64,000 bases of DNA from assembly GCA_002269645.1 (NCBI GenBank), contig NIVC01002064.1:144133-208132 (forward strand). Direction: 5' to 3'. Numbering within the stretch: the stretch's first letter is position 1; every line of letters begins with the position of its first letter. Both the position numbers and the translations under genes were made by a program. Below the pieces are notes generated by a model. That model had not been told where the DNA came from. It saw only the letters and a list, made by a program, of their open reading frames with translations, and did not search any database. Positions 6,737 to 63,828 of the stretch are shown piece by piece. This DNA is from Macrostomum lignano. Taxonomy: Eukaryota.

Positions 6737-7397
6737 CCACAACAAGCAAGCAGCAGAGATCAAGAATCCCCGCAGGTCAAGGCTATGAAAACCACTTCCC
6801 TAGCTGTTGCCGACTACAAATCGATAATCGTATTTCCCGGAATTCATTCCCCAATACCGTAATCCCTCCGAGCTGCACAAGCATGCGGAATCTGGGTGAG
6901 AGATGAGGCAAGAGAGAGGTCACAGCTGCTGACAGGCTGGACTCCAAGAGAGCAACCATCCCACCAAAGTGTCACAATACGAGTATGTGCTCAATTTTGC
7001 ATCGCGGTGTGACACGTGCCGGCTTGCGGCATGGATATGGGGCAGGCTGCGATCTCTGCTATGCCTCTAAGCATGCAAAGAGTGTTCTCAGATGTGTCTG
7101 TCTACACCATGGCTCTCTAGAGCCACCTCAGCATGGCAGAGAGAATTTTTATTTAGCCATCGAAATTCAATGCCGAAATCAGCTTCACTAAAACGCCATT
7201 ATCGCCAGTTGGCTTTGTTGATGGGCTATGATTCTTCCTGTCGGGCTTTTTGGCTGATTGCTGCTCTGCTGCTTGCACCTCGGGAGCTTCAGGCGTTGCT
7301 AATCATTCTTCACACAGCATCTTTGTCAGGCCTGCCTCATCGGAGCCTGTGCGTTCTGAGTATTCTTTTGTAATTTTCTGCAAATGAAACTGTTTTC

Positions 7398-40999: not shown

Positions 41000-42307
41000 G
41001 CTGGCTATGTTTTTTAAAGTCTGTAATGTTACTTCTGGATCGTCATTGCTGAAGAAGCAAGTAGATTTTTAAGTATTAAAAATTCTCAAATTCATTACGT
41101 AATACTAATACCATGTGCAATTTTGGTATTTCGCATCCAATTTTGAAGCTATTTTTATTAAGTCTTATAAAACATACTGAAAACGCTTGAAGTTAGTTAA
41201 ACTTATTCTACTATAAAATTATATTGCGTTGAATGATACTAATTCAAATATGACAGGAATCACATGAGAATTAATAAAGCTAAAATTCATATTATAGTAA
41301 ACTAGAGCTTCTGCAGTAGGCATTAAATGTAAGAAAAAAAACTATAGCCTCAAACTACAATATTTGCTAGGAATGAGAAATTATTATCGTAGGTTGTTAC
41401 TACTAAATTGCAACCAAACGTTTGAGCATGTTGTAAATCGCCGTAAAGATGTACAAAAAACGAAAAAGAGTTTGTAAAGAATTCAAACTCTTTCTACATG
41501 TTTACTAACCAAATATACGTTCGACTTTGCTTATAAGCCGGAAACAGTAGGAAGGTATAGGGTATAGACGAGTGCGTGAAAATTCAGGTGATTTGCAGTA
41601 ATGCCAGCGGGCGATGCTGTTCTAAAATTAAGCTATAAAACGCAGAGTAAAAAATTGAATTAGAGCCAAAACTTTTTGCGCATTTCTAAAGACGCGTAAT
41701 ACTTGTAGTTAGCATAGTCTTTTTTATGTTTAATAAAGAAAACTCTAGGTCACATGTTCTGATTTACGCGCATACTCACGTTATCTTCTTAAAAATTGCA
41801 AGTCATCTGTTAAAATGAATAAAACTGTACTTAAAATACGACTTTTGGCACGTTAGGTCTATGTTGCTGCAATATCTGCATGGCTAGTTAGTCCATCGTA
41901 TAGCTCAGCTCCTCGCCCACTAGGGGAGCCTTTTTAATGCAGTTAACAAAAATTAATTACTTCTTAACTGTCAAGTCAGCATAGGCTTAACGTCTTATCG
42001 ACAGCTTGGCCTTATTCTGCATTAAATTGTAGGCCTAACCCAAAAACTAGAGCAGTATAACTAGGGCCTATGTTTGCATGCAAAATAACTGACTTGACTT
42101 AATTGCCTAATCTAGGCCTAGGCTTAGCCTACTATAGATAGACCCAAAATAATATGAATTAATTAAAGACCTTTCGCCTGTATTAATTTTTGTATATCAT
42201 TGATTAATGTGACAATATTAGGCCCCTATTAGTAAATAAATATGACAATAGAAAAAGCAGACAAAATTCACATGTTTACAATTTCAGCATTATCCTAGTT
42301 TCCCACG

Positions 42308-42751
42308 TTAAATTATTTTGAGTTAAAAATTGACTCAATAAGTTAAAACAAGTTAGTCCATAATTGATAGCACTCAATAGTCTGCTGAGCTCACTAAATG
42401 GCATAGCATATAGGCCTAATAATGAGCAATCCAAAACTAGTTAGAAACTAAGAACTTTGCATTTGCATATGAATGAATGCCATTGAAAGGACTTAGGCGC
42501 ATGTCAAGGCAAAGTTCAAGAACATATATGGCACCAGTGATAACTTATTCAATTCACACTTGAACAAGACCTCTGGAGTCTGGTGTCACCTTTACCTAGA
42601 GAAATTCTTCGACCTTTGTCCTTTGGCAACTTCTTGTTTTGGGTTGCCCATTATTATGCGATTTAGTGAGCTCAGCAGACTATTGATTACTATTAACTAG
42701 GCCTAACTTGTTTTAACTTATTGAGTCAATTTTTAATTCAAAATAATTTAA
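42308..42751. mobile_element. Foldback/MITE-like element with ~110-125-bp imperfect inverted arms
   Basis: 42308-~42432 is the imperfect reverse complement of ~42641-42751 (AAATTATTTTGA.TTAAAAATTGACTCAATAAGTTAAAACAAGTTAG ... AATAGTCTGCTGAGCTCACTAAAT); TTAA at both outer ends. Confidence 0.65.
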
Positions 42752-43582
42752 TGCAAGAAACTAAGATTAGGCCAGCCTATGCCACAATTTCTGTCTTGAT
42801 TGAGTTACAGAGTTGAGAATTTACATTTAGTTAGGAAATAAGTCAATGAAGAATTGTGTCAAAATTGAAGTCAATCACTTTATGTGGAGCAAACTTATAA
42901 TAGCCAAAGTTAGTCAGTTTTGAAACCCTCTTTTTCTACATCTAGCCACATAAGGGCATAAGGCTAGGGATTGAAAGAGAAAGAGATAAAGGTTAAAGTG
43001 GTTGCTATGCTAAAAAAAGCAGACTAACTTAAAGTGCACAATGCCATTCAAGACTGACTTTGAACCTCAAAATTTTAGGTAATTGTGTAAAAATATAAAA
43101 AAATTGATTGTGTCAAATTTAAAGAAGATTGGTAAAACTAAAGCGACACTAGGCCTATAGAGAATTTAGTGAAAAAATCACATGTTTAAGCATTTTTTTG
43201 CACTTTTTAGGTAAGAAGACTTAAATAATCTTCAAAGTCAAGTGCAAATTTGCACCTGGCATAAATTTGATTGTCATAGGCACAAAAGCACAAATTCTAA
43301 ACATATGGTGCAAATTTCTTTGCTTATCAAGGGTGCAAATTTGGAAGTACAATACCTCTTTGCCTATATAGACAATATGTTTTTTGCCTGGTTCTACCTA
43401 ATTATAAGTTTTGCATTGTACTCTCTAATATAGTGGATCTTAAATCTTTGTATTTATGGTATTTCTTAGTTTCCTAGTCATGATCTACAAGTGAATTGCA
43501 GCCAAATTTGCGTTGATTTTTGCTAATTTAATTAACTTCTTAAAAGTATATATACTGGCTATACATCTAAGCAGTAGCAAAT

Positions 43583-44368
43583 AGCTCATTCCATATAAGA
43601 TGGACATATTTGGAAAATAGAAAAAAGTCAATATTTTTGCTTGCCATTGCCTAATTAGCCTATTTTTTTACCAAATGTTTATATTGTGCAATATATACAA
43701 TCTAAGAATAAAGGAATGGTAAAATGTTGGATTAGTATGTTATCAATTGGAAAAAAGTCATTTTTGTAAAAATTTGGACATTTTTCGAAGCAAAAGACAT
43801 CATTAAGATTTTGTACCTTTTAAAAACAAATAGAAAGCTTTTGAAGGTTGAAACAAACTATAGATAAAAGTATAGTACTTGCATCATCAGGTAAAAGCAT
43901 TGGTGACCAAATAATCTATTATATTTTTAATGTATTAGTACCTCAAAGTTACTGAATTGACAGAAAAAAAAATGTTACGACCATAATGTTACGACCATAA
44001 GGCTGCCTTTTCTTTTGTATCTTTGTTGCCTTTTGAGTTTATATATTCTAATAAAAGAGTATTATTTCTAAAGATGTTCTTAGTCAAATTTTAAAAATGT
44101 ATTGCAAAATATTAAAAATGAAAAATGTTATAAGACTTTTACCTTTTAGTTTCTATATGTCAAAAATCCTGTCGTTACGACCATAAGTGTCATTTAAGGT
44201 TTAATAGCATCTATACTAATGATGATATCTATATGAAACTCTATAAATATATTCTAGACAAAATAATCTTTCATTTAAAATATAGGTTTAGTATATTCTA
44301 TTATTAGATTTCATTTTATAAGTAAAAATAACCTGTCATGTTACGACCATGCTTATATGGAATGAGCC
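43583..44368. mobile_element. Non-autonomous TIR DNA transposon (786 bp) with a 4-bp AAAT target duplication, Sola1-like
   Basis: Termini AGCTCATTCCATATAAG and CTTATATGGAATGAGCC (16-bp perfect inverted match). AAAT at 43579-43582 and 44369-44372. Four GTTACGACCAT motifs at 43974, 43988, 44174 and 44340. Confidence 0.65.
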
Positions 44369-46725
44369 AAATGCAGAGGAGGGGGCTTTGCTTGCTAGAG
44401 CCCCCCATTGACCCTAGAAAAGCTGTTTTTGTAGGTGCACAAACCCCTAAAAAGTAATTAAAAATGTCTATATTGGTTGAGTGGTTTTGAAGTCTATGAC
44501 CATAGCAAGTAAAATTGAAAATAGATACAAAGATAGAGTTTTGATTTTTATAGTTAGAGATTAGGTCTAGCTATTTTTATTTTTAATATTTCTAAAATAT
44601 GTCTATTAAAAATTTTGGCCTAGTCTAAGGCCTAATACTATGTTTTATACTAATTAAGACAATTGAAAATAATATTATCTTGCAAATTTAAAGTTGGGCC
44701 CTAGGCCTATTCTATGGTATAAGCAGATAAGTAGGTTAGATTATTAAATTAATAGAAATCAATTTGGCCTAGCCCTAGGGCCTAATGTTGCCCATTTCTA
44801 AATATCTTTCTTTAGCTATTCTTTTGAATTAGAGTTAGAAAAAAAAGTTTTTGTTTTCTATTATTAAAATTTTCAGTTCTATACTAGTAAGTAAGCTTTA
44901 GGCCTACCATTATTTTTTAGTATAAATATTACTTGGTAGGCCTAAATTACAAAATAAATAAAGAAGCAAAAAGCCAAAAATTTATAGTTTATGAAGGCAA
45001 AAATGGAAAAGGCAAAAAGGTATTGCAAAGCAAAAAAGAGAACCCTATTGAAGCAAGGTCTAAAAAATACTAGAAATCCTTTTTCTTTTATTAGATATCT
45101 AGATTACTTTGATATATTGCAGCTTAACATAGCCTTTTTTGCTTTCCCATATTGCCTTAGCTCCCTTACCTTTTATTCCTTATATGCAACTTTTTTATTC
45201 CCTTTGCATTTCATTGCTACATTACCACTAAGCTATTTTATATTAGATATTATCCATAAAATGGCCATTGTTTACAATAAGAAAAGAGAATAAAAAATAA
45301 AACAAGTTGCATAGCCAATATAGTTTCAGAGTTTATGCATTTGTTTATATATATATATTTAGTAAACCAAAATAGAGTAGACAATAGGCCTAATCAAAAC
45401 CTAAAAAGAACTAAAAAGATAAGTTTTTATATTTTCTGACATAATAATTCTATAGTAGTATATGTATAATCTTATTTGTTATTTGCTAGTTTCATTTTAG
45501 TGATTTTATCCATCATGGACATGGATATCCTAAATATATAAAATTTTGATGATAGGAAATAATTTATATCTTTTAAGCATTGATTTGGGCATCTGCTTCA
45601 AAAACAAATTAAATAGAAAGGTTGCCATGACATATTTATAATTATATAATTATAATTTATATAATATAGTATCATTTATTGTTTTAGTAGAAAATAGCAA
45701 TCAGCCCCCATTTATAAGGCAACAAATAAAGTAGCAGAATAATATCAAAAATATTTATAAAAATGCTAATATAGTTGTTTTCTTAAATTTTAGTGTGTAA
45801 AAATAAATCTTAAAATTAAGCATTTATAGTAACCTTTCAATTATCAACAATAAACAAAATCTATTTGCCTTGGCATTTCCAAGCTTATCTGTTAGAAAAG
45901 CAATTTTTAATTCTATTAGTTTATTTTGAAGAATATTTTATATATAAGTGAGCCTTTTATATAAGCATTTTTTATCTAAATTCAAGGTGCCAAATTAATA
46001 ACCAGAATGAAATTTAGCATCAATCAAAAAGTCAAATTAAATAGCATATCAAAATCTTTACTTATACTTTTTACATTGCTGCACCTCTCTAAACTACAGA
46101 AGTTGCAAAAGTTTGCAGATTCCTTATTTATAGATATATATTATTCAAATTTTACAATCAGTAGAAATCTCGAAATCCAAATGCTTATTGATACTTCAAA
46201 TAATATATAAATAGGTTACTATAAGCTACTAAATAAGTATGGAACTTGGATTAACAGTAAAACTACCAAGAGGGGTATTAATGTTTTGCTGCACCAGAAC
46301 AGAGCAATATAAGTACATTAAATTCAAGAACATTGTCTGACACAGGCGTCAAGGTGATGATATAATGCTTGAAAGACTCGCTAAGGATGTTAAGCAGTTG
46401 AGGTTTGCCCATTATTAAAGCTTGGTCAGCAAAATCAAGTAAATTAGCAAAGTGGTGTCCGTAATCATCTAGTAGCATCTGTTGAAAGTTCCAACAGCAT
46501 TGAGATGATGACAGAATGCTTGAAAGACTAGCTGATGATGTCTAGCAGTTGAAGTTTGCTATAGGGTGTCCATAGCGAACTTTAATAACACAATAGGGTG
46601 TCCATAGTCACCTGATGTTACATGTTGAAGGTCTAGAAGCTGCGCTTGGGTGAAGGCCAGTGATCAAATTCCAGACACATTTGTCGATGTGATGATGAGA
46701 TTTGGACTGGAGGCTTGGCAAAATA

Positions 46726-48025: not shown

Positions 48026-48235
48026 TACACTAGTGCTTATTGAAAAAATCTGGCCTTCTGGCAGAATTTTTTCCATATCTCGATGGTCTGGAGGGCGCTG
48101 GCGACAAGAATTTCATCCATGTTCTTGCATTTTGTGTGCCTGCGTTGTAAGTTCTGGTACCAGCTACAAATCGTACCTTTCATACCTAGGTGTATTATTT
48201 CAAAACTGCTGTTAATATTTCAGACAACAACGGTT

Positions 48236-51200
48236 ATGTCAGCAACCCCGGCGCCGTCAGGTATCGAGCAGCAACTTGTTGACCGATTGCGCGCCACAGT
48301 GCAATCTTATTTATCCAGAATGCAATACAAATCTGCCGCATTCTGGGCCGATAAGCTTGTTAGTTTAAGCCGTGGCCAACCGAAAGATGTGTACAACTAT
48401 TGCCAGTGCTTGTACTTGACTAAGCAGTATCATCGGGCTATTCACCACCTGAAGCAGCGCCAATTGCACGTTCGCACAGTGGCTGGCTGCCATCTGACCG
48501 CACTGTGCCACTATGATAGTGGCGAATTCAATGACGCCTTGGCGGTGCTAGACAGTGCGGCCGCTGGTAATGGCGGCACGGCTGCTGACACTGGCGGCTT
48601 CAATGCCAGCCAATGGTTAGCCAGCGCTAGTCGGGTCCTTGACGATGATAATTTGACAGCATCAACCGAATGGCAACAGCTGCCACAGTTGGACGAATTC
48701 GGTCTGCCATGCCGTCCGCTTGCCGGTTCGCTGGCTCTGCTACGAGGTCGCGTGTTCGAATCTCTGGGCGTGAGGCCACGCGCAGTTCACTGCTTTGTAG
48801 ACGCCCTGCGCAAAGATGCCTATTGCTACGAAGCATTCGAAGCGCTATTCGGTTCGCAGAATTTGCGCGCATCCGAGGAGGCCGAACTATTAGCAAATTT
48901 GCATTTTGATGAGGCCTGCCAGACTCCCGAGGAGGCTAAGCTACTGCAGCTGGTGTACGGCAATCGGGTTAATAAGTACGGCCCACCAAAGGAGCTGGAA
49001 GTGCCGGACTCGATTGTGGCGCTGAAGGTGAGCTCGCTCAATTGAAAGCAGGTTTGGCCTGGGGTCGATGTACACCCTGTGTGAGCGTGTGTATGAGTGG
49101 GTGTACGTGCAGAGTGGCCGTCAGCACTCATTGTAGGACAATGTCACCGAATGCGTTGGCGCCAAGATGCCCACAATCTTCACGCAAATACTATTATCAT
49201 TATTGTTAGTTGGCAGGAGGCAGACAGCGGCCCTGACTTTTTCATCCATACTGAAAAGGTGTGGATTTTAGTGCACACTGAAATAAATTGGCCATCTCAC
49301 GGATTAAGGCCCTGACTAGTCATAGTCATAGCGTTTTTTGTTGTTGTTTTCTGAGGTAAAAAATAGCACCTCAACGCCCTGTGCCTTGGTGATTGTGAAT
49401 GGGGAGTTGGTGCGCATAATTGCACAAATTGATAAAAAAAACTTTTTATACCATCCCTAATCTCATTCAGGACAATGGCGACCTGGTAACTAGCCTGGCT
49501 GAGCGCTACTTCTACGCGTGCCACTTCCACGAATGCCAACAATTAACATCGAGCGTATTGGCCAACGATCCGTTTAACGATCTCTGCCTACCATTGCACA
49601 TCGCCGCTTTGAAAGAATTAGGCAAAGATAATCAATTGTTTTTGCTCGGGCATCAACTAGTTGAATTATATCCGTCTAGGCCTATTTCTTGGTACGCTGT
49701 TGGCTGTTATTATCTGTGCATACACGACAAGGAGATGGCTAGACGGTGAGTTTAAATATTTCATTCTTTCTACTACCAGTAGACGCAGTGTGTGCGACTT
49801 TCTCGGTCTCAGTCTAGACGCGTACATTAGAACATAGTTGAAACGCGCGGCAGCCCATCCGCTGAGAATATAGGATCAATACTTGGTTTTGAGTGCTTAA
49901 ATGTCTATGACACTCGTGCAGTCGTGACCGAGACATTTAAGCACTCCTATATCCTATATTCTCAGCGGATGGGCTGCCGCGCGTTTCAACTATCTTCTAA
50001 AGTCCAAGTTTAGAATACCAAAGTTCAAAACTAGGATGCCAGATGGGATTAGTCAGAATTGTTTTTTTTAATTTTAGTTCACTCTAGTTGCGACTTAGTT
50101 CACTCTAGTTGCGAATTAGTTCACTCTAGTTGCGACTTAGTTCACTCTATTTGCGACTTAGTTCACTTTAGTTGCGAATTAGTTCACTCTCGCTGCGACT
50201 TAGTTCACTCTATTTGCGACTTAGTTCACTCTAGTTGCGACTTAGTTCACTCTATTGCGACTTAGTTCACTCTAGTTGCGAGTTAGTTCACTTTAGTTGC
50301 GAATTAGTTCACTCTAGTTGCGACTTAGTTCACTCTATTTGCGACTTAGTTCACTCTAGTTGCGACTTAGTTCACTCTATTTGCGACTTAGTTCACTCTA
50401 GTTGCGAGTTAGTTCACTTTAGTTGCGAATTAGTTCACTCTAGTTGCGACTTAGTTCACTCTAGTTGCGAATTAGTTCACTCTAGTTGCGAATTAGTTCA
50501 CTCTAGTCGCGAATTAGTTCACTCTAGTTGCGACTTAGTTCACTCTAGTTGCGACTTAGTTCACTCTAGTTGCGAATTAGTTCACTTCAGCTACAATCCG
50601 CCCACGCATTGTAGCTACTTGATGAAGTGCACCAGAATGAATCGCTACTTCGGGCCTGGTTGGATCGCTCTTGGCCACGCTCTAGCTGAGGACACTGAGC
50701 ACGATCAGGCCATAGCTGCTTACACCACGGCTATACAGGCTATGCAGGGCAGTCACGTGCCCTACTTGTACATCGGCTTAGAGTACGGCCTCACAAATAA
50801 TCTACCATTGGCTAGCGAATTCTTTGATCAAGCTGTTGAACTGTGCCCGAACGATCCATTCTTATTGCACGAGCGCGGAGTTACGTATTTCAATGCGCGC
50901 GACTATGCCAAGGCTGAGGAGCAATTCCGGCTGGCTGTTGGCCGGATCGATGAACTGTCCGGCGAAATGCCCAGCTCATTCTGGGAGCCCGTGTTTAATA
51001 ATCTCGGGCACACCTGCCGGAAATTGAAGAGGTTTGCTTTTTGTACTTTAAATTAGTAGCAATAATAGTATAAACTAGCACCTTGTAAGTCACTTTTTAA
51101 TCGTTAAGTAAAATTGTTCAAGCAAAAAAGTATGGGCCTGAAAGCCAGCTGTCTAGCTTAAGATATCAGATCCCTTATGAGCTTTGGCTCAATGCATTTG

Positions 51201-51696
51201 AGCACCCCCATGAGTCGCAGGATTTCAGCTATCCCCCCATCTCAGCAATTTCCCATGAGCACGAAGAACCGTGTCTCACATAGTTGGACAGTTTAATACA
51301 ACTGGTCGTATTGAGAATCTTGCCTCGAGGAGGTGTCAAACGGAGGTCTTTCAGCGATGCTATGATGGAGAGCATTTGTATTTGTAAAGATGAAGCAAGG
51401 GCTCATCTTGACGTTTCTGGGATGTCGGTCGGCTATAGATGTCGGACGCTTTCTGCCGCCAAATTCACCCTTTATCGGATCCTGCAGAATCAGCACTGAA
51501 AGCGGCAGTGAAACAAAATTTAGGCCATATAATGTGAAGTCGCTGACAGAAACTTGGCTCAAGCAGCTACCCATGTTAGTGCTCAAGCGAGATGTAGAGG
51601 TCTCGATGAATGCCATCACTCAGCAGAAATGCATTCAGCGGGTGAACCATATTTAAACATGCATCTAGAGGTGTCTGACTGAATCACAACCAACTG

Positions 51697-51743
<47 letters not shown>

Positions 51744-52369
51744 TCTCCTATACCATAAGTAAACCCTCTCCTATAACATACCATAACTACCATAAGTAGT
51801 AGCTATAGTATTCTGATCAGTAAAACGTATAGAATCAACCGGATAGTTTGTAAGCAGGATATTATTACTGCTATTGTTCTCAATACCACAGATACGATGA
51901 GGCCATCCAGCACCACCAGCGAGCCTGGTCCCTGTATCCCGGCAACGCAGCCACCCTGACAGCTCTTGGCTACGCGTTCGCTTTAAACGGCGATTTCGAT
52001 CGAGCCGTTGATCACCTGACCCGGTCGCTTAGTTTAAACTATGACGATAAATTTAGTTCGCAATTGCTCAGCAAACTGGTTGAAGTGATGGCGGAGACTC
52101 ACCTGCCCTGGTTAGACTCTCTACTAGGCGATCGGGGCGACAGTTTGCCAACCATGAACTGGCAAGACCTGCCCGACCGGAAACCGGCGTCGTTGGCTAT
52201 GGAATCTCCTAGCGGCGCCTCGCTGTCCGGTCGGTGGCTGCAGTCGGCTACCACACAGACGCCGAATTCTGCTATGCGACTGCGGCAGCAGCAGCAGCAG
52301 CGTCAGCTGACCATGTCGGCTGGCAGCGTGGAAAGTGTCGATATGGAGGACGTTTCTATGGATATTTGA
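48236..52369 (+). CDS. CDC16: Anaphase-promoting complex subunit 6 / cell division cycle protein 16 (TPR protein), ~653 aa
   Basis: Exons 48236-49027, 49471-49745, 50615-51031, 51892-52369; phases 0,2,2; total 1962 nt. Motifs YKSAAFWADKLVSLS, QYHRAIH, ALRKDAYCYEAFEAL, LFLLGHQLVELYP..ISWYAVGCYY, FGPGWIALGH....EHDQAIAAY, WEPVFNNLGHTCRKLK.YDEAI. Confidence 0.96.
49830..49997. mobile_element. Hairpin MITE flanked by TA in CDC16 intron 2
   Basis: Outer arms 49827-49876 and 49951-50000 (50 bp, one mismatch); inner arms GAGTGCTTAAATGTCT 49891-49906 and 49931-49946 (perfect). Confidence 0.75.
50071..50587. repeat. 21-bp minisatellite (TTAGTTCACTCTAGTTGCGA[C/A]) in CDC16 intron 2
   Basis: Direct reading. 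Confidence 0.95.
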
Positions 52370-52572
52370 TTATATTGTTATATTTTGCTGCGGCAATCTT
52401 AGTACAGTGGGAATTCAACAGTCTTGCAGACTCAGTTAGTTACATATGATAAGGTCACTCTCTATTCTCCGCCAGTGTCGATACGTGTGGCTACTTTTTA
52501 TGACAGTAGTAGAATTTGCATGTGTAAAGAAAAAAATTGTAGGGAATTTAGGGAATTTCTGCCTTTTGTTTT

Positions 52573-52658
52573 AGGCAGAGGCTGTGTGCACTCTGGTGCA
52601 CTTTAAGCGACATTGTCACACAACCGGCGAGAGGCATCCCTGCCCATTCCGCCGACTC
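52573..52658 (-). mobile_element. SINE family B, short 3'-end fragment downstream of CDC16
   Basis: GGCTGTGTGCACTCTGGTGCACTTTAAGCGACATTGTCACACAACCGGCGAGAGGCAT..TGCCCATTCCGCCGACTC closely matches 29328-29407. Confidence 0.7.
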
Positions 52659-52671
52659 ATCTTGTATCTTG

Positions 52672-53148
<477 letters not shown>

Positions 53149-53780
53149 TATCTTCTTGTGTCGTGACTCAGTGCTGTGTCTCCAGAATGTTCGTTTAACC
53201 AGTTTATTTTCCGCTGGGAAAGATCTTGAAGAAGAAGAAGCCAGTCTTGTCCTTAAATGTTCTGGTGCAGCTAAATGTTTTTAAAAGGTATTAATTCTGT
53301 TACAGTGCTACTTTTATTAAGTAGTGCAACCACCGTGCTGATAATCTAGTAATCTGCATGCTTATTGATAAACTGTGGGTCATAAGGCATTTTCTATTCT
53401 CCATATATTTGGAGACAATTTTTTTTCCAAATAATTGCATTGTGTAATATTTTTGCAACTTGTAACGCTGTCTGACTCTTACAAAAATTACGAATAGAAA
53501 TAATACAAATAACTTTGACTATAATTGCTATGTGTATTTTATTATAAATCTGTAGTTCAACATTCTTTGTGTTTTTATTTTGTTTATTCAAATTCTAAGT
53601 GCTTAGTGTCATAGATGTCTTTGGGGTTCCTTTTAGCTACTTGCAGTAGTGTTGATAGTTTTGTTTTCAGCAGAAAAATTCAGTGAAACCTCCACAGTTT
53701 TATCCTCGGGGCAGTAAAATATCAGAAATCGAAGCCAGGTTTTTCTATCACGTTATTTTTATTAACATCGCAGACCCTTC

Positions 53781-53810
53781 TACTAACAGTAGTGCTGTCG
53801 CCAAATTTAG
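53781..53810 (+). promoter_or_regulatory. Branchpoint TACTAAC plus 3' splice acceptor (cis- or trans-splice site) in front of the glutaredoxin-like gene
   Basis: TACTAAC at 53781-53787; acceptor CCAAATTTAG ends at 53810. Confidence 0.6.
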
Positions 53811-54212
53811 ATTTTCAGCAGACTAATTTCAAGCGTTAGTAGCGGCGGCGGCGGCGCTGCTCGGTTTGCCCAGCTACTATCGGTCAGCAGCAGTCGCTCC
53901 TTTGCCACCAGTTCCAAGCCGAATCAGAGTTCGCCAGAACTGCCAGCAGTGCTAACAATGTATACTCGGCCGGGTTGCACTCTGTGCGAAGATGCGGTTG
54001 AAGAGGTTCAACATTTGATCGACGCTGGTCGGATTGTACTGCGTCGGGTTGACATCGACTTGCCAGAGAATGAGCGGTATCAGGTGTGGCGCTACGATAT
54101 ACCCGTGTTTAAAATTCGCGGCCTGCCAACTATGATGCATCAATTAGACTTGGACGCTTTGACCCGGCATTTGAATCAGTTGGAGCTTGCGGAGAGGAGC
54201 AAAACTGATTAA
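53811..54212 (+). CDS. C5orf63: Glutaredoxin-like protein (C5orf63/DUF836 type, CTLC motif) with a predicted mitochondrial presequence; no in-frame genomic ATG before the domain
   Basis: LPAVLTMYTRPGCTLCEDA...VDIDLPEN...WRYDIPVF...MMHQLD matches the family pattern. Frame is open back to the TAG at 53808-53810, giving IFSRLISSVSSGGGGAARFAQLLSVSSSRSFATSSK. Confidence 0.88.
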   Translation: MFSRLISSVSSGGGGAARFAQLLSVSSSRSFATSSKPNQSSPELPAVLTMYTRPGCTLCEDAVEEVQHLIDAGRIVLRRVDIDLPENERYQVWRYDIPVFKIRGLPTMMHQLDLDALTRHLNQLELAERSKTD

Positions 54213-54248
54213 TTGGTGAGCTTTTTACTTTTGTATGCGTACGTCTAT

Positions 54249-54808
54249 GAGTTAAGGATCGGGTAGGATTTATGAGTGAAGGATCGGGTAGGATTTATGA
54301 GTGAAGGATCGGGTAGGATTTATGAGTGAAGGATCGGGTAGGATTTATGAGTGAAGGATCGGTAGGATTTATGAGTGAAGGATCGGTGGTGTTCATAGGT
54401 GAGGGATCAGAGGGTAGGGATTAGGGAAGGGTTTATGGGTAAAGAATCGGAGGGTAGGGATTAGGGAAGGGTTCATGGATAAAGAATCGGAGGGTAGGGA
54501 TTAGGGAAGGGTTCATGGGTGACGGATCGGAGGGTAGGGATTAGGGAAGGGTTCGTGGTGACGGATCGGAGGGTAGGGATTAGGGAAGGGTTCGTGGTGA
54601 CGGATCGGAGGGTAGGGATTAGGAAGGGTTCGTGGGTGACGGATCGGAGGGTAGGGAAGGGTTTATGGGTGACGGATCGGAGGGTAGGGAAAGGTTTATG
54701 GGTGACGGATCGGAGGGTAGGGAAAGGTTTATGGTGACGGATCGGAGGGTAGGGAAGGGTTTATGGGTGACGGATCGGAGGGTAGGGAAAGGTTTATGGG
54801 TGACGGGT
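54249..54808. repeat. G-rich minisatellites (25-bp units, then ~33-40-bp units containing GGGTAGGGATTAGGGAAGGG)
   Basis: Direct reading. Confidence 0.92.
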
Positions 54809-55613: not shown

Positions 55614-56019
55614 ATGTTTAATAAAAGTGGCGATGAAAACAATAATGATGATGAAGATTTCCACGCCGAATCGCCGAGTCAGCTTCGTCCTCGAGGCGGC
55701 GGCCTCGGCCGCATTGTACATTGATTGGCTCGAATCGGTGCTGCGATCGCATCGACAGATGGTTGCTGAGCCAGTTGGACTCGGCTTACCTGCCAGATCT
55801 AGTCTGGCTGGACAGGGCTAGCGGCCTGTTTCGCATCGATTGGCATCGGCGGCAGTGTGACAGGCGGCGGCTGCGGCCGTGACTGCGGAGGACACGGCTG
55901 TGGAACTGCTGCTGCCGCTGCTGCTGAGGACTGCGGCAGCGGCCGTGGTAGCGTATTCACTGCCTGGCACCGGTATCGAGGTGACTGCCTGTCTGTCCGT
56001 CTGGCTGTCTGCCTGTCTC

Positions 56020-56065
<46 letters not shown>

Positions 56066-56191
56066 CCTCTGTCTGTCTGTCCGTGTGTCTATCTGTCCGT
56101 CTGTCTTTCTATCTGTCTGTCTGTCTGTCTTAGTGTCTGTCTGTCTGTCTGTGTGACTCTGTCTGTCTGTCTGTCTGTCTGTCTGTGTGAC

Positions 56192-56222
<31 letters not shown>

Positions 56223-56951
56223 TAGTGTCTGTCTGTCTGCCCCTTTTCTTATATGCCTGTCTGCACTGCCTATCTGTCTGTCCCGTTAGTTAGTCTGTCT
56301 GTCGTGCCTTTGCGCATCTGTCTGTTTGTTAGTATGTATATCATCATATCTCTTATTCTTCTTTGTCTTGTAATACCTTGCAGTTTTGTCTAATACATTC
56401 AATTTCCTTATCAATCGATTAATAGGTAAAAATACTTTGCTAAGCGGACTCCAGCAGAGTAGTTCCGTATCAATTTTATATATTGTACTAAAGTACATTT
56501 ATAACTTCAGCATATCTGTAGCACATTGTTGCCCTCTTACTAAATTCGCAGGCCGCGACAGCCCGGCTGAATGGCGCCGACTTAAACAAAATTTTCGCTG
56601 CGCCCTAAACGGCAGCCGGCGCTATCTGCGCTATCGGCGCGACCTAAGCCGGCGCGGGGGCGCCAACGCCTACCGAGTCTACCAGTTCGTTGCTAACGAC
56701 GCCAACAGTCGCGTCGCCGTTTTGTCTACGCCAGCTACTAGTGTTGCTAGCACCCCACAGATGCCAGCTTTGACATTGCGGCCAATGAAAACTATGACCA
56801 ATTCGATTGTAAACCCGTTGCCAAGCATACTGTTGACATTGACAACGAAATTATCATTGATTGGCTGATCGACAAGTCGCCGCTGGTGTCCAGCATTGAT
56901 CCGTGCATGCATTCCAGCGGCAGCGCCTTGGCTGGCTTGCTGCAATCCTGA
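55614..56951 (+). CDS. IRF: Interferon regulatory factor (IRF)-family transcription factor, DNA-binding domain plus short acidic tail; reading frame interrupted by indels (sequence error or pseudogene)
   Basis: [33 protein letters not shown] (W at 55760, 55805, 55841; spacing 15 and 12 as in IRFs), [10 protein letters not shown] (W 55965), intron 55981-56551 (GTGACT...TACTAAATTCGCAG, phase 1), [19 protein letters not shown]...AYRVYQF. Start ATG 55614 and stop 56951 require frameshifts. Confidence 0.82.
55988..56300. repeat. (TCTG)n tract in the IRF intron
   Basis: Direct reading. Confidence 0.9.
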
Positions 56952-57320
56952 TCACTTCAAATAACTGTGGCTTGCTTTGTTTGATTGTATTCCATTTCAT
57001 TTTAATTTTTGTCTACTCAGTACAGTATTAATGGTGTATAGATATGTTATCATATTCCCATGGATATGTTATCGCTTATCGGACATCAATGATTAGCATG
57101 ACTTGATTCTAAATATATGTTATCAAAATTTAAATTATTTCACACGTTTGTCTATTTACTTACCGTTGTTAAAGGCCTTTTAGTTATTTTTTCAACATTT
57201 GGGTTGCTATCTAATTACCAGTTAGAAGAATAAGAATAAAGGTAAGTAATTTTAGATCAGGACGGATTATTTTACGACCTTTGGGATTTTAAGTGTAATA
57301 ATAATTTATAGATCAACAGG

Positions 57321-57738
57321 TTGAGCCACCCTCCCAGGTTGCTGGGCCACCCTCCCAGATCCTCAGTTTCTGGGCCAGTCTCCCAGATCCTCAGTTACTG
57401 GGCCAGCCTCCCAGATCCTAAGTTGCTGGGCCACCCTCCCAGATCCTCAGTTGCTGGGCCAGCCTCTCAGATCCTAAGTTGTTGGGCCAGCCTCTCAGAT
57501 CCTCAGTTGTCGGGCCACAGCCTCCCAGATCCTCAGTTGCTAGGCCAGCCTCCCAAATCCTCAGTTGTAGGCCAGCCTCCCAGATCCTCAGTTGCTGGGC
57601 CACCCTCCAGATCCTCAGTTGCCGGCCACCCTCCCAGATCCTCAGTTGCCGGGCCACAGCCTTCCAGATCCTCAGTTGTCGGGCCACAGCCTCCCAGATC
57701 CTCAGTTGCCAGGCCAGCCTCCCAGATCCTCGGTTGCT
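57321..57738. repeat. 28-bp minisatellite (CCTCCCAGATCCTCAGTTGCTGGGCCAG) upstream of NUP155
   Basis: Direct reading; same family as 61067-62272. Confidence 0.93.
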
Positions 57739-58024
57739 GAACCACTGCTACGCTCAAAGATCCTTAATAGCTTTGCTACCCTCCTAGATCCGTAGGCTAC
57801 CTTGGTACCCTCAAAAATCCTCATTTTATGGCATCCCATATCTTCAATTTGAGTGTCCAAATCCCTAAATTCTACCCTTTGTGTCGCTATCCCAGATTCC
57901 TAATACAGGAGAGGCAGAACGGATATCCTGTACAGTTGCCCCAACAATAAATATGCCAGATTTAGTACATTTTTGCCAGCTAAAGCCCATAGCGTCGCGC
58001 TAATTTCATGTCAGTCCTAACAAA

Positions 58025-61000
58025 ATGGTAAATGGACCGCCGTCAGTCGCCATCATGCAACAGCATCAGCAGCAGACTCCGCCATCAAGCGGCATTGCTA
58101 TTGGCAGCTGCGGAATCGCCGCTACCCCGTCGGCCGCAGCGTCCGGCGTTGCAGCGTCCGGCGCGCCAGGCGGCGACCTGATCGAGGAGGGCCTGCAATT
58201 CCTGGAGCCGTTCGTCCAATCGGAGCGCAGCTACCCGGATCTGGCCACCCTGCTAGGCGGCGTGGGCGATCGGGTGACCATGAGCGGCACCGACGTGGCG
58301 GCCTATCCGCCTAGTCCGAATGGCTCAGGCGGCGAAGTGTCGATCTCGCGCGTCACTCCGCTGCCAGGCGAACTAATGGAGAAACTGGGCGCTATGCAGA
58401 CCAACTGCCTCATGGGCGTGTTCCCGGAGGCTAGCCGGGCCTGGCTGACTGTTGATAACGAATTCTTCTTGTGGAACTACGAGGACGGCAGCGATTTAGC
58501 TTATTATGACGGGCTTCAAGACGCTATTGTTGCTGTTGGATTTGTACAGCCTAGGCGAGATGTGTTTGCAGACGAGGTGCACCATCTGTTGTGCCTGGCT
58601 ACGCCTTTAGAATTAGCTGTGCTAGGCGTTAGTTATCAGTCTGGCCAGGTGCACCTGCTGGCCGAACCGCTGTTGCGCCTGCCAACTGATGGACAGGTTG
58701 TCACCTGTATTGAAGGCAGCCGATCGACTGGCCGGCTGTTCGCTGGCACCCAGTCTGGCTGCCTGCTCGAGGTGGCGTATGAGGAGCGCCGAGTTGGATG
58801 GCTTAGCGGCCAGTACACGGTGGGTGGGGATCTGGGTGTGGAAAATATAGAGGTGTTAAATGATAAGACACAATATACAGAGTTACTTAACTAACTGACT
58901 GACTGACTGACTGACTGACTGACTGACTGACTGACTGACTGACTGACTGACTGACTGACTGACTGACTGACTGACTGACTGACTGACTGACTGACTGACT
59001 GACTGACTGACTGACTGACTGACTGACTGACTGACTGACTGACTGACTGACTGACTGACTGACTGACTGACTGACTGACTGACTGACTGACTGACTGACT
59101 GACTGACTGACTGACTGACTGACTGACTGACTGACTGACTGACTGACTGACTGACTGACTGACTGACTGATGACTGACTGACTGACTGACTGACTGACTG
59201 ACTGACTGACTGACTGACTGACTGACTGACTGACTGACTGACTGACTGACTGACTGACTGACTGACTGACTGACTGACTGACTGACTGACTGACTGACTG
59301 ACTGACTGACTGACTGACTGACTGACTGACTGACTGACTGACTGACTGACTGACTGACTGACTGACTGACTGACTGACTGACTGACTGACTGACTGACTG
59401 ACTGACTGACTGACTGAGTTAAAAACTAAAAACTAACTTGATAGTATTGCTACTTAAAGCAGTACATAAGTACATTAAAGATAATTGTTACACTCGCATC
59501 TTTTCAGGTACAGGGCCGCTTAATCAATCACAGCGTGTCCAGCCTCTCCCGCCTAGTGCCCAGCTTCATCAGTAGTTTAGCGGCAGCCGACGATCCAATA
59601 TGCCAGGTGTGCGTAGACGACAGCAGACGATTAGTGTACACCAGATCGCAGGAGTCGACCGTGTTTGCCTATGCCTTGTCTGCCGAGGCTGGCGATACGG
59701 CGGCCAGGCGGGTGGCGGCCTTGCGCGGCTCAGACCTGGCCGCTCATGCTGCCCGCATTGCTCACATGGTCGATCGCAGCTGTCTAACCGATATTGTACA
59801 CCTGTCGCCGCTGACTGCTCAGCATTCCGCTATGCTCTATCTTATGGCCGTCACCGGGTCCGGGGTTCGATTCTATTTCGATGCTCGCCTACGCCTGGCT
59901 CACGTTCGGCTAGGCCCGATGTGTCCGAGTCTGCCTAGGCTGGCCGATATTCGGCTGGCCACGGAGAGCCGCGGTACGGTCCTGATGCTGGCCAGTCGAG
60001 GGGAGGATCGGGACACACTCTATGTGCTCAGTCCGGACCCGTTTCCTAGGAGACCGCAGCTGCAGGTGCGCCTGGGGCTTTTCTATGTACTATTGCGTTT
60101 CATTGCGTGTACTTTTATGGTTTCAGAGTGTACTTTATGTGCTTCAGTGTAGCGCCAGTCCAGCCACTTACAATGCTTCAGTGTAGCGCCAGTCTCTAGT
60201 ATCCATTGTACTGTATGCTTCAGTATAGCGCCAGTCCAGCCACTTTCCAATGCTTCAGTGTGGCGCCAGTCCAGCCACTTTCCAATGCTTCAGTGTGTCG
60301 CCAGTCTTACTTACCAATGCTTCAGTGTGGCGCCAGTCCAGCCACTTTCCAATGCTTCAGTGTGGCGCCAGTCCAGCCACTTACTAATGCTTCAGTGTGG
60401 CGCCAGTCCAGCCACTTACCAATGCTTCAGTGTGGCGCCAGTCCAGCCACTCTCCAATGTTTCAGTGTGACGCCAGTCTTACTTACCAATGCTTCAGTGT
60501 GACGCCAATCCAACGGCACTGTATTTCAGATGGGTTCCACCTAATTAGCCGTACACACTTTAACTTAATTAACTTAGCCATGCAATAGTAAATTAAATAT
60601 TCTCCTTCATTTTCCCCTTTATTCAGGAGGCCTGCAGCGTGGCCTGGCCCCTGGCCGTGCCTGGATCATGTGCTGCCTGCCCAGCCCGCAGCTGATTATC
60701 GGGACATCGGCATCGATCCCCAGCTGCACGACGGTCCCCTAGTTGGCAGGCCGTATCCTCCTGTGTTTCTGACTCAACACGTTGATCCGGTCAGGCGGTT
60801 TCTATTAGTATCAGTGCACGGCCTTGTGCTGCTGGAATTGCAGACTCCGCTAATGCGTCTGGCCGGTTTGTTAGCGGCCAATCAGCCGGATTCTCGTCCG
60901 GTGACAGATTGGTTTGCCCACTTTGGCCCCGAGGAGAGCAGCTGCGTCTGTCTGATCCTAGCCTGCTGCGATAGCGACGATCTAGTTAGGGAGAGAGCGC

Positions 61001-63828
61001 TGGCCGCCGTCATGCTGCATGGCACTGCCGCGGCTGTTAGAGATGGTTGGTACTTTTATTTTGAGTCTCCTCAGTTGCTGGGCCAGCCTCCCAGATCCTC
61101 AGTTGCTGGGCCAGCCTCCCAGATCCTCAGTTGCTGGCTAGCCTCCCAGATCCTCAGTTGCTGGGCCATCCTCCCAGATCCTCAGTTGCTAGGCCACTAT
61201 CCCAGATCCTCACCAGCTGCCCGCATCCTCAGTTGCTGGGCCACCACCACCCTCCAGATCCTCACCTGCTGCCCAGATCATCAGTTGCTGAGCCAGCCTC
61301 CCAGATACTCAGTTGCTAAGCTAGCCCTCCCAGATCCTCAGTTGCTGGGCCAGCCTCCCAGATCCTCAGTTGCTAGGCCAGCCTCCCAGATCCTCAGTTG
61401 CTGGGCCAGCCTCCCAGATCCTCAGTTGCTGGGCCAGCCTCCCAGATCCTCAGTTGCTGAGCCACCTGCCAGTCCCAGATCCTCAGTTGCTAGGCCAGCC
61501 TCCCAGATCCTCAGTTGCTGGGAGCCAGCCTCCCAGATCCTCAGTTGCTGGCCAGCCTCCCAGATCCTCAGTTGCTAGGCCAGCCTCCCGCATCCTCAGT
61601 TGCTGGCCACCACCACCCTCACAGATCCTCAGTTGCTGGGCCAACCTCCCAGATCCTCAGTTGCTGGGCCAGCCTCCCAGATCCTCAGTTGCTAGGCCAG
61701 CCTCCAGATCCTCAGTTGCTGGGCCAGCCTCCGCAGATCCTCAGTTGCTGGTCCAGCCTCCCAGATCCTCAGTTGCTAGGCCAGCCTCCCGCATCCTCAG
61801 TTGCTGGGCCACCACCACCCTCACAGATCCTCAGTTGCTAGGCCAGCCTCCCAGATCCTCAGTTGCTGGCCAGCCTCCCAGATCCTCAGTTGCTGAGCCA
61901 CCTGCCAGCCTCCCAGATCCTCAGTTGCTGGGCCAGCCTCCCAGATCCTCAGTTGCTGGGCCAGCCTCCCAGATCCTCAGTTGCTGGCCAGCCTCCCAGA
62001 TCCTCAGTTGCTGAGCCACCTGCCAGCCTCAGATCCTCAGTTGCTAGGTCAGCCTCCCAGATCCTCAGTTGCTGGGCCAGCCTCCCAGATCCTCAGTTGC
62101 TAGGCCAGCCTCCCAGATCCTCAGTTGCTAGGCCAGCCTCCCGCATCCTCAGTTGCTAGACCAGCCTCCCAGATCCTCAGTTGCTGGCCACCACACCACC
62201 CTCACAAATCCTCAGTTGCTGGCCACCACCACCTCACAAATCCTCAGTTGCTGGGCCACCACCCCCTCACAGATCTTTATTTCTGTAGGCAACCCATTCT
62301 GGCCCATCGGCAGTTTATAAATACATGAAATGCCATCAAATTTCAAGCATAATTAATTTACACCATCTTCGCACCCATCGCAGCCGCCATGGCCGCCTCA
62401 ATCGATTGCCAGACGCCGGTTCCATCAAGCGCCGCGGCAGCCGACCCGTCGGCCAATGCCCTGCTGTCCGGCCTGTCCCGCTACGCCGCCAGAGTCCTGC
62501 TGCCTCTCTGGTACAGCCCGATCGTGTCTGAACGGCGCGGCTGCTTCTTAGTCAGCCGATTAGAATCCGACGAGCTTGGCTGGTTCTCGTCTCATCTGAC
62601 TCACCTGTTCAGATTTGTGCAATCCAATCTAAGCCCAGCTAAGCGCTTCGGCTAGGGGCCGCGTTGAAGCTGAGAGTCAACAGCGGGCCTACAAATTGTT
62701 GCAATTGATTTCTACTAATTTGGAACTGTTGAACCTGTGGAAACTGCTGGCTGAGCATCAGTTCTATCTTGTGGCAGGTTTGTACTGATTCAAATTGCAC
62801 ATTACCCTTGTGTACTTTATACTGCACATTACCCCTTGTTCCATACTTTATACTACCCATTACCCCTTGTCCCATACTTATACTGCACATTACCCCCTTG
62901 TTCATACTTTATACTGCACATTACCTTTGTCCCATACTTTATACTGCCATTACCCCTTGTTCCATACTTTATACTGCACATTACCCCTTGTCCCATACTT
63001 TATACTGCACATTACCCCTTGTTCCATACTTTATACTGCACATTACCCCTTGTCCCATACTTTATACTGCACATTACCCCTTGTTCCATACTTTATACTG
63101 CACATTACCCCTTGTCCCATACTTTATACTGCACATTACCCCTTGTTCCATACTTTATACTGCACATTACCCTTTGTCCATACTTTATACTGCACATTAC
63201 CCTTGTCCCATACTTTATACTCCACATTACCCCTTGTTCCATACTTTATACTGCACATTACCCTTTGTCCCATACTTTATACTGCACATTACCCCTTGTT
63301 CCATACTTTATACTGCACATTACCCATTGTGTCCCATGCTCTGCACTATTGTCACAGAAATTTCAAGCCTCAAGAACCTCCCCGACCACAATCGATTGTT
63401 TTACAGACGCCTGACAGAAGACGAGCGCGCACACGCTTCGTGGAACGCGTTTCGAGACCTACTTCTGGCTAAGAATCGCCTACTGCTCAATCGTTTAATC
63501 GCCTGTCTGCTTGAGCACTACCTGGCCGACAGCGCCAGCGTTGACAGCATCTCTAACAAGCTGCAGGAGGCCTGCTCATCGCTCTATACTCCGCAGGATG
63601 CCCTGTGTGCCAAGGCTAACGAAATGCTGCAAGCGCTGCCGGCGAGCCGCTCGACCGTCGGACCAGCCTGTTGGCCGAGGCCGGCCGGCTGTACAGGGAG
63701 GCCGGCACCTCCGTCAGCCTGGCCGATGTGCTGCCCCGGCTAGAGGCTCTGCAGGCCTACGAGACTATGGCCGGATTGTGCCTGGCCTTGGCCAAGCAGT
63801 GGGATCCTCAGGTGCGCGTCTGTGTGTG

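What the first reader, a model, noticed from the sequence alone, without database searches (positions are those of the whole stretch)
53781..54212. Glutaredoxin-like gene lacking its own ATG: initiator Met may come from a spliced leader
Seen: 46 codons of Arg/Ser/Ala-rich, almost acid-free, presequence-like sequence (IFSRLISSVSS...RFAQLLSVSSSRSFATSSK) precede the domain in frame with no ATG. They begin immediately after an acceptor TAG (53808-53810, itself an in-frame stop) with a perfect TACTAAC branchpoint ~24 nt upstream. Known: flatworm spliced-leader RNAs end in a conserved 3'-terminal AUG that can serve as the initiator codon, and C5orf63-type proteins carry an N-terminal mitochondrial-targeting-like extension. 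Inference: SL-AUG|ATT TTC AGC gives MIFSRLISS..., so trans-splicing would gate mitochondrial import, while an unleadered mRNA would start at MYTRPGCTLC (53958) and give a cytosolic form.
Basis: partly seen in the sequence, partly recalled or inferred. Interest (0 to 1): 0.75.

Follow-up and report, generated by a model that had tools for sequence, protein, structure and literature searches.

The report
Flatworm glutaredoxin-like gene without own ATG
A small mitochondrial-type redox gene of the flatworm Macrostomum lignano has no start codon of its own for its conserved N-terminus; the spliced leader's AUG could supply one, but only at a splice site that existing gene models do not use.

Summary
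The window is Macrostomum lignano (Mlig_3_7). ORF 53811-54212 (+) encodes the only C5orf63-type glutaredoxin-like protein found for this species. It opens right after stop/acceptor TAG 53808-10 and has no in-frame ATG for 49 codons.

The first ATG (53958, M50) cannot be the ancestral start. It lies mid-strand in beta1. The conserved LP-x-LT motif (Pro in 243/270 homologs) lies upstream of it. 88% of Met-started homologs carry at least 15 residues before that motif.

The M. lignano spliced leader ends in ATG. Joined at 53811 it gives MIFSRL... in frame (134 aa).

However, all three existing gene models are 5'-partial and begin at codon 53820 or 53823. That implies mRNA 5' ends at 53819/53822, the consensus tandem acceptors TTTTCAG|CAG|. 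There the SL AUG is out of frame (MQTNFKR*/MTNFKR*). No model starts at 53811.

SL-AUG initiation is already known in flatworms (Cheng 2006). At best this is a new member of a known kind. Counting SL-read junctions at 53811, 53819 and 53822 would settle it.

The parts
53781..53787 (+). TACTAAC branch-point-like heptamer. It lies 24, 32 and 35 nt upstream of the three candidate acceptor AGs. A second branch-like TATTAAC sits at 53760-66.
   Evidence: identical in all four genomic copies
53808..53810 (+). TAG: an in-frame stop that closes the frame upstream, and a candidate 3' splice acceptor (exon start 53811). It is the only acceptor that puts the SL AUG in frame (MIFSRL...). It is a weaker match to the M. 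lignano trans-acceptor motif (TAG, not CAG).
   Evidence: motif from PMC8629364
53812..53818 (+). TTTTCAG consensus acceptor #1 (exon start 53819). It fits the annotated 5'-partial protein RLISSV... that begins at 53820. Here the SL AUG gives MQTNFKR*.
53819..53821 (+). CAG acceptor #2 of a NAGNAG tandem (exon start 53822). It fits the partial proteins LISNVSS... (PAA48522.1) and LISSVSS... (A0A1I8IG53). Here the SL AUG gives MTNFKR*.
53837..53842 (+). TAG TAG double stop in the +1 frame. It ends the 6-7-codon upstream ORF opened by the SL AUG on CAG-spliced mRNAs.
53811..53939 (+). N-terminal extension, codons 1-43 (IFSRLISSVSSGGGGAARFAQLLSVSSSRSFATSSKPNQSSPE). It is Ser/Ala/Arg-rich, has one acidic residue, carries an R-S-F|A motif of the MPP R-3 type at codons 29-32, and is predicted disordered. 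It contains no ATG.
   Evidence: the presequence reading is inference
53940..53957 (+). Codons 44-49, LPAVLT: the conserved family motif (LP-x-LT) and the first half of strand beta1. It lies upstream of the first genomic ATG. CTG (53940) and GTG (53949) are in-frame near-cognate codons; CTG is CAG in copy L003.
53958..53960 (+). First genomic in-frame ATG (M50). The aligned column is Leu in 235/270 homologs and Met in 7. It sits in the middle of beta1.
53952..54173 (+). Glrx-like (PF05768/DUF836) thioredoxin-fold domain, residues 48-121. The CTLC redox motif is at 53976-53987 and the YDIPV cis-Pro loop is present.
54210..54212 (+). Stop codon TAA.
52370..53810 (+). Outron/intergenic spacer between the stop of the upstream same-strand 657-aa TPR/ANAPC3-domain gene (TGA 52367-69) and the acceptor cluster. 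It contains a 470-bp (TGTC)n array at 52677-53147. The repeat-adjusted distance is under 1 kb, the published operon criterion.

Best explanation
The locus is the single coding exon of the M. lignano ortholog of the mitochondrial-type glutaredoxin-like protein C5orf63/GLRXL. It is annotated as BOX15_Mlig003590g4, 5'-partial. It is the downstream gene of a same-strand gene cluster, and its 5' end is made by SL trans-splicing at a cluster of three acceptors within 11 nt: TAG|ATTTTCAG|CAG|.

The conserved full-length reading frame has no AUG in the genome. The mature mRNA contains only two AUGs before codon 51: the SL's 3'-terminal AUG and M50.

Most likely the acceptors are used heterogeneously:
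- mRNAs spliced at the upstream TAG (exon start 53811) read SL-AUG|AUU UUC... They give the full-length 134-aa protein with its presequence-like N-terminus.
- mRNAs spliced at the stronger, annotated CAG sites (53819, 53822) read the SL AUG as a 6-7-codon upstream ORF. They can then only start at M50 or at a near-cognate codon.

What is shown: gene identity, absence of a genomic ATG, conservation upstream of M50, the frame arithmetic, and the SL sequence.
What is inferred: that trans-splicing occurs here, that the TAG site is used at all, and that the extension is a mitochondrial presequence.
For: - Species and annotation.
- SL = ...TTGCATG, and trans-acceptor motif [T/C]TNCAG: PMC8629364.
- TBONE cut transcriptional units at SL-read peaks and trimmed the SL before ORF calling, so any SL-AUG-dependent ORF would necessarily be annotated 5'-partial: PMC5730564.
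- The ORF opens exactly at the acceptor cluster after a run of stops.
- P45/L48/T49 are conserved upstream of M50. The median N-extension in 255 Met-started homologs is 31 aa, and only 3% have fewer than 5 residues before the motif.
- AF2 places beta1 at residues 46-52.
- SL+53811 gives a 134-aa in-frame product, and the mRNA holds no AUG other than the SL AUG and M50.
- No in-frame upstream ATG exon with a GT[AG]AG donor exists within 3.8 kb.
- The acceptor cluster and TACTAAC are identical in four genomic copies. The N-extension frame is kept by a 3-nt indel in L003.
- The TAG is the first AG at a workable distance (24 nt) downstream of TACTAAC. Under the AG-scanning rule of 3' splice-site choice it should compete (established knowledge, not tested here).
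- Precedent: the SL AUG is needed as initiator by more than 40 S. mansoni cDNAs (Cheng 2006, as cited in PMC9851317).
- Human C5orf63 was used as a mitochondrial import substrate (PMC8664129).
Against: - All three available gene models start at codon 53820 or 53823: window/L001, L003 = PAA48522.1, and A0A1I8IG53 from the ML2 assembly. This implies exon starts at 53819/53822, where the SL AUG is out of frame.
- None starts at 53811.
- The TAG site deviates from the published CAG consensus.
- No transcript-derived protein beginning MIFSRL exists in the 15-billion-protein collection.
- The presequence-like composition is not statistically distinctive.
- Paralog comparison is too shallow to prove coding constraint on codons 1-43: 4 nonsynonymous and 2 synonymous changes.
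- No SL-containing reads could be inspected.
Confidence: 0.4

Rival explanations
1. Non-AUG initiation. The mRNA is spliced only at the CAG acceptors. The SL AUG is bypassed or read as a short uORF. The conserved frame is then opened at a near-cognate codon. Candidates are AUU inside the SL (the main frame is open through the SL at 53819: ...QFIACRLISS), AUU 53826, CUG 53940 or GUG 53949.
For: - The annotated 5' ends fit the CAG sites.
- The main frame is stop-free through the whole SL for the 53819 junction.
- CTG 53940 and GTG 53949 have a purine at -3 and lie just before or inside the conserved LPAVLT.
- Roughly 72% of schistosome trans-spliced mRNAs carry an out-of-frame SL AUG, so it must often be bypassed (PMC9851317).
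Against: - CTG 53940 is CAG in copy L003.
- The AUU codons have poor context.
- A start at CTG or GTG would discard the whole presequence-like extension that nearly all animal homologs have.
- Near-cognate starts are generally inefficient (general knowledge).
Confidence: 0.2
2. Only the 84-aa M50 protein is made, as annotated for copy L002. The upstream open frame is a recently orphaned relic of an ancestral presequence whose ATG was lost.
For: - M50 is the first AUG after the SL-AUG uORF on CAG-spliced mRNAs, with a good -3 A.
- NCBI annotates an 84-aa complete protein at L002.
- An ATG-free open stretch of this length is not very rare by chance, at 4.5%.
- The Leu-to-Met change at a conserved position would create this start.
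Against: - M50 is in the middle of beta1. The start would delete four strand residues and the 90%-conserved Pro45.
- LPAVLT is still intact in all copies despite the deep divergence of this lineage.
- The L002 frameshift is contradicted by the in-frame ML2 protein of the same allele, so it is probably an assembly error.
- Only 3% of homologs have fewer than 5 residues before the motif.
Confidence: 0.2
3. An unannotated upstream exon with its own ATG is cis-spliced to one of the three acceptors.
For: The acceptors would serve cis-splicing equally well. The M. lignano annotation is known to break in repeat-rich spacers (PMC8629364).
Against: - None of the 285 in-frame ATG-to-GT combinations in the 3.8 kb upstream has the GT[AG]AG donor consensus.
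- The upstream space is filled by the end of the neighbouring gene, its 3' region and a (TGTC)n array.
- Two independent annotations stop exactly at the acceptors.
Confidence: 0.1

Closest known systems
Flatworm mRNAs that take their initiator Met from the SL 3'-terminal AUG (Cheng, Cohen, Ndegwa & Davis 2006, J Biol Chem 281:733; summarised in PMC9851317 and PMC12582326)
   Same: The organism is a flatworm with an AUG-terminated SL. The conserved ORF is open from the acceptor and has no genomic initiator. The SL AUG is in frame at one candidate acceptor.
   Different: At the acceptors implied by existing gene models the SL AUG is out of frame. Use of the in-frame TAG acceptor is not demonstrated. 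The phenomenon has not been described specifically for M. lignano in the papers read here.
Glutaredoxin-like protein C5orf63/GLRXL (Pfam PF05768 Glrx-like, DUF836; yeast YDR286C type)
   Same: It has a thioredoxin fold, the C-x-L-C motif, the LP-x-LTLYTK beta1 motif, the YDIPV loop, and an N-terminal basic, acid-poor extension. The best hits are animal C5orf63 homologs at 36-49% identity.
   Different: There is no encoded initiator Met. Met replaces the conserved Leu in beta1. One extra residue (A46) is inserted between Pro and Val.
Dual targeting of T. brucei isoleucyl-tRNA synthetase by alternative trans-splicing (PMC3273800)
   Same: Alternative SL acceptor choice would decide whether a presequence is translated.
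   Different: In the trypanosome the AUGs are genomic and the sites lie far apart. Here the switch would be an 8-nt frame change relative to an AUG carried by the SL itself. Nothing has been tested here.

Membership tests
C5orf63/GLRXL glutaredoxin-like family (PF05768) | Pfam Glrx-like match above the gathering score | tested here: met
   44.8 bits against a cut-off of 26, E=1.6e-11, residues 48-121
C5orf63/GLRXL glutaredoxin-like family (PF05768) | C-x-x-C redox motif and YDIPV cis-Pro loop at conserved columns | tested here: met
   C56, L58, C59, D96?I97 P98 V99 are invariant or near-invariant in the alignments
C5orf63/GLRXL glutaredoxin-like family (PF05768) | LP-x-LTLY(T)K beta1 motif | tested here: met
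   LPAVLTMYTR. Pro in 243/270, Leu48 in 215/270, Thr49 in 234/270. Position 50 is Met here and Leu in 235/270
C5orf63/GLRXL glutaredoxin-like family (PF05768) | Met-initiated N-terminal extension of at least 15 aa in animal members | tested here: inconclusive
   The extension is present as an open frame (43 codons), but no ATG is encoded
C5orf63/GLRXL glutaredoxin-like family (PF05768) | Mitochondrial location | not testable with these tools
   Only composition and an R-S-F|A motif are available. The composition is not distinctive. The human protein was used in an import assay (PMC8664129)
SL-AUG-initiated flatworm mRNAs | The species' SL ends in AUG | tested here: met
   CGGTCTCTTACTGCGAAGACTCAATTTATTGCATG (PMC8629364)
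SL-AUG-initiated flatworm mRNAs | The mRNA is SL trans-spliced at this locus | tested here: inconclusive
   The evidence is indirect. The 5'-partial models end exactly at consensus acceptors. This is gene 4 of a transcriptional unit cut by SL peaks. No reads were inspected
SL-AUG-initiated flatworm mRNAs | SL AUG in frame with the conserved ORF at the acceptor(s) implied by existing transcript models | tested here: not met
   53819 gives MQTNFKR*; 53822 gives MTNFKR*
SL-AUG-initiated flatworm mRNAs | SL AUG in frame at some plausible acceptor | tested here: met
   TAG|53811 gives MIFSRL..., 134 aa
SL-AUG-initiated flatworm mRNAs | No genomic in-frame AUG upstream of the conserved N-terminus, and no upstream cis exon | tested here: met
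Dual targeting by alternative trans-splicing (T. brucei IleRS type) | Two or more acceptors in use that give mRNAs with and without a translatable presequence | tested here: inconclusive
   The annotation implies two acceptors (53819, 53822), and both lack an in-frame SL AUG. The third (53811) is hypothetical

The most novel reading that the evidence does not exclude
Choice among three acceptors packed into 11 nt (TAG|ATTTTCAG|CAG|) moves the AUG carried by the spliced leader into or out of frame. In frame, it makes a presequence-bearing, mitochondrial glutaredoxin-like protein. Out of frame, it becomes a 6-7-codon uORF followed by initiation at M50. M50 is a Leu-to-Met substitution at a conserved beta1 position that may have been fixed to create the second start. 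This would be a frame-toggle form of dual targeting that depends on an initiator codon not encoded in the gene.
Probability: 0.2. Interest if true: 0.6.

Novelty: new member of a known kind. Interest (0 to 1): 0.35.

Why it matters
If the SL AUG is the initiator here, this would be a clear case in a free-living, transgenesis-capable flatworm model of a conserved protein whose start codon is not in its gene. Mitochondrial import would then depend on trans-splice-site choice.

There is also a practical point. The current M. lignano annotation trims the SL before ORF calling. Such genes are therefore left '5'-partial' or truncated to an internal Met, as with the 84-aa model at L002. SL-aware ORF calling would correct them.

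If the SL AUG is not used, the gene becomes a candidate for non-AUG initiation, or for a truncated thioredoxin fold.

Tried and rejected
- Rfam gathering scan and tRNA scan of the window found nothing.
- No SL RNA gene is in the window.
- I looked for transcript-derived proteins carrying the SL-AUG junction. Only NCBI/UniRef genome-model proteins exist for this gene, with no Logan or transcriptome members. No direct RNA evidence could be obtained.
- The gene id Mlig003590 appears in no held paper. The supplements of PMC5730564 hold no per-gene tables.
- Cheng et al. 2006 is not held. It is cited second-hand through PMC9851317 and PMC12582326.
- Flatworm orthologs for a comparative test of the acceptor/frame relation did not surface. 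The closest named relatives are barnacle, bivalve, snail, mosquito and sponge proteins, and the profile search is dominated by vertebrates.
- The paralog test of coding constraint on the extension was uninformative. The copies differ by only ~1-3%.
- The composition test for a presequence was not significant.
- The S. mansoni phytochelatin synthase paper was checked as a possible precedent for SL-AUG-gated mitochondrial targeting and rejected. That gene is not trans-spliced.
- Assembly error as the cause of the missing ATG, or of the frame relation, was rejected. Four Mlig_3_7 copies and the ML2-derived protein agree on the sequence from the acceptors into the ORF.

Full report
**What is there**

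The window is the last 64 kb of contig NIVC01002064.1 of the Macrostomum lignano assembly Mlig_3_7 (GCA_002269645.1). On the + strand the frame that contains TAG 53808-10 is closed by frequent stops upstream. It is then open for 133 codons from 53811 to TAA 54210-12.

The first in-frame ATG is at 53958, codon 50. Pfam Glrx-like (PF05768) matches residues 48-121 at 44.8 bits, against a cut-off of 26. TACTAAC lies at 53781-87.

**Is it more than chance?**

- The open, ATG-free stretch alone is only mildly unusual. It is seen at 4.5% of ATGs in this window.
- The acid-poor, basic composition is found in 18% of stop-free 43-aa windows here.
- TACTAAC occurs at chance density overall: 7 non-repeat hits against 6.7 expected. 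That makes one in a given 30-nt stretch about a 0.002 event.

**Why the upstream frame must be coding**

An exhaustive HMMER search found 247 relatives. The named ones are 'glutaredoxin-like protein C5orf63 homolog' from animals. I aligned 270 of them:

- The column of P45 is Pro in 243.
- L48 is Leu in 215.
- T49 is Thr in 234.
- The column of M50 is Leu in 235 and Met in only 7.

Of 255 Met-started homologs, 88% have at least 15 residues before the LP motif (median 31), and 3% have fewer than 5. The AlphaFold2 model puts strand beta1 at residues 46-52 and leaves residues 1-45 disordered.

So M50 is an internal residue. The ancestral protein starts upstream, in a stretch that has no ATG in the genome. 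M. lignano has no other gene of this family in the protein collection.

**Copies**

Four genomic copies exist:

- The window and L001, which are 99.8% identical and represent the same allele.
- L003.
- L002.

The branch motif and the whole acceptor cluster are identical in all four.

L003 differs in the extension by five substitutions (three nonsynonymous, two synonymous) and an in-frame GGT insertion. The domain carries only synonymous changes.

L002 has a 1-bp deletion in a CC run. This explains its 84-aa 'complete' annotation. The UniProt protein from the older ML2 assembly carries the same E-to-G allele in frame, so the deletion is probably an assembly error.

**Trans-splicing context**

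M. lignano has one 35-nt SL, CGGTCTCTTACTGCGAAGACTCAATTTATTGCATG, and the trans-acceptor motif [T/C]TNCAG (PMC8629364). The Mlig_3_7 annotation cut transcriptional units at peaks of SL-containing reads and trimmed the SL before ORF calling (PMC5730564).

The gene is named Mlig003590g4 and is annotated 'partial'. It follows a same-strand 657-aa TPR/ANAPC3 gene that ends at 52369. It precedes a same-strand nucleoporin gene. The spacer holds a 470-bp (TGTC)n array. The repeat-adjusted distance is therefore under the 1-kb operon criterion.

**The critical point: which acceptor**

Three AGs lie within 11 nt: aaatttAG|ATTTTCAG|CAG|ACT. Joining the SL to each gives these products:

| Exon start | Reading from the SL AUG |
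|---|---|
| 53811 | MIFSRLISS..., 134 aa, in frame |
| 53819 | MQTNFKR*, out of frame |
| 53822 | MTNFKR*, out of frame |

In every case the mature mRNA contains only two AUGs before codon 51: the SL AUG and M50.

The available gene models begin as follows:

- The window/L001 model begins RLISSV, at codon 53820.
- The L003 model (PAA48522.1) begins LISNV.
- The ML2 model (A0A1I8IG53) begins LISSV, at codon 53823.

A 5'-partial ORF starts at the first complete codon of the transcript. These models therefore imply exon starts of 53819 and 53822, which are exactly the two CAGs of a NAGNAG tandem behind TTTT. None begins IFSRL.

So the existing evidence places the SL AUG out of frame. The in-frame reading needs the weaker TAG site 8 nt upstream.

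In favour of some TAG use: it is the first AG at a workable distance (24 nt) from TACTAAC. The fact that two neighbouring CAGs are both represented also shows that site choice here is loose. This is inference from general splicing rules, not a result.

**Alternatives**

- No upstream in-frame ATG exon with a consensus GT[AG]AG donor exists within 3.8 kb.
- In-frame near-cognate codons exist: ATT 53826, CTG 53940 and GTG 53949. There is also an AUU inside the SL in the open main frame of the 53819 junction. CTG is not conserved in L003.
- A pure M50 start would truncate beta1 and drop Pro45.

**Comparison with what is known**

The SL 3'-terminal AUG as initiator was established in Schistosoma mansoni. 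[quoted passage not shown] 2006, via PMC9851317; also PMC12582326). Dual mitochondrial/cytosolic targeting by alternative trans-splicing is known for T. brucei IleRS (PMC3273800). Human C5orf63 was used as a mitochondrial import substrate (PMC8664129).

If true for this gene, it is a new member or a minor variant, not a new kind.

**Verdict**

- Observation: confirmed.
- Interpretation: partly supported. The gene really lacks its own initiator for a conserved N-terminus, and the species has an AUG-terminated SL.
- Caveat: the acceptor needed for the in-frame join is not the one supported by three gene models.
- Estimated probabilities:
  - The SL AUG initiates the full-length protein on at least a fraction of mRNAs: 0.4.
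  - Non-AUG initiation: 0.2.
  - M50-only product: 0.2.
  - A missed cis exon: 0.1.
- Interest: 0.35.

Noticed in passing
window 53812-53821: The trans-acceptor is a NAGNAG tandem (TTTTCAG|CAG|). Gene models of different copies and assemblies start one codon apart (R at 53820, L at 53823). This suggests both CAGs are used.
   Followed up: partly
L002 about 2975 (equivalent to window 53934): There is a 1-bp deletion in a CC run in copy NIVC01000525.1, so NCBI calls only an 84-aa protein from M50. The ML2-assembly protein A0A1I8IG53 carries the same E-to-G allele in frame. This is probably a homopolymer assembly error in Mlig_3_7.
   Followed up: partly
window 54217-54221 and 54246-54806: A consensus GTGAG donor lies 5 nt after the stop codon. 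It is followed by ~560 bp of 25-, 33- and 40-nt tandem repeats, so a 3'-UTR intron is possible. The UniProt model A0A1I8IG53 instead splices from CAG|GTGTGG (54083|54084) to a foreign C-terminus, which is probably a prediction artefact.
   Followed up: no
window 52677-53147 and 55985-56239: Long (TGTC)n/(CTGT)n microsatellites flank the gene on both sides. One lies in the outron/intergenic spacer. Their length differs between the genomic copies.
   Followed up: no
window 1-34000 and 57000-63400: These regions have a very high density of minisatellites with periods of 15-66 nt. Examples are a 3.8-kb array of GACACTAG units at 2913-6737 and a 42-nt array at 31692-33147 that carries 23 TACTAAC copies on the minus strand. 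There is strong local GC/AT skew.
   Followed up: no
window 42000-46000: An AT-rich island (GC 26-31%) sits within an otherwise 40-55% GC window.
   Followed up: no
window about 48224-52369 (+) and downstream of about 57500 (+): The neighbours lie on the same strand. Upstream is a 657-aa TPR/ANAPC3-domain protein. Downstream is a 1328-aa nucleoporin (Nucleoporin_N/C domains), seen in the sister contig L005. The layout is compatible with a polycistronic unit.
   Followed up: partly
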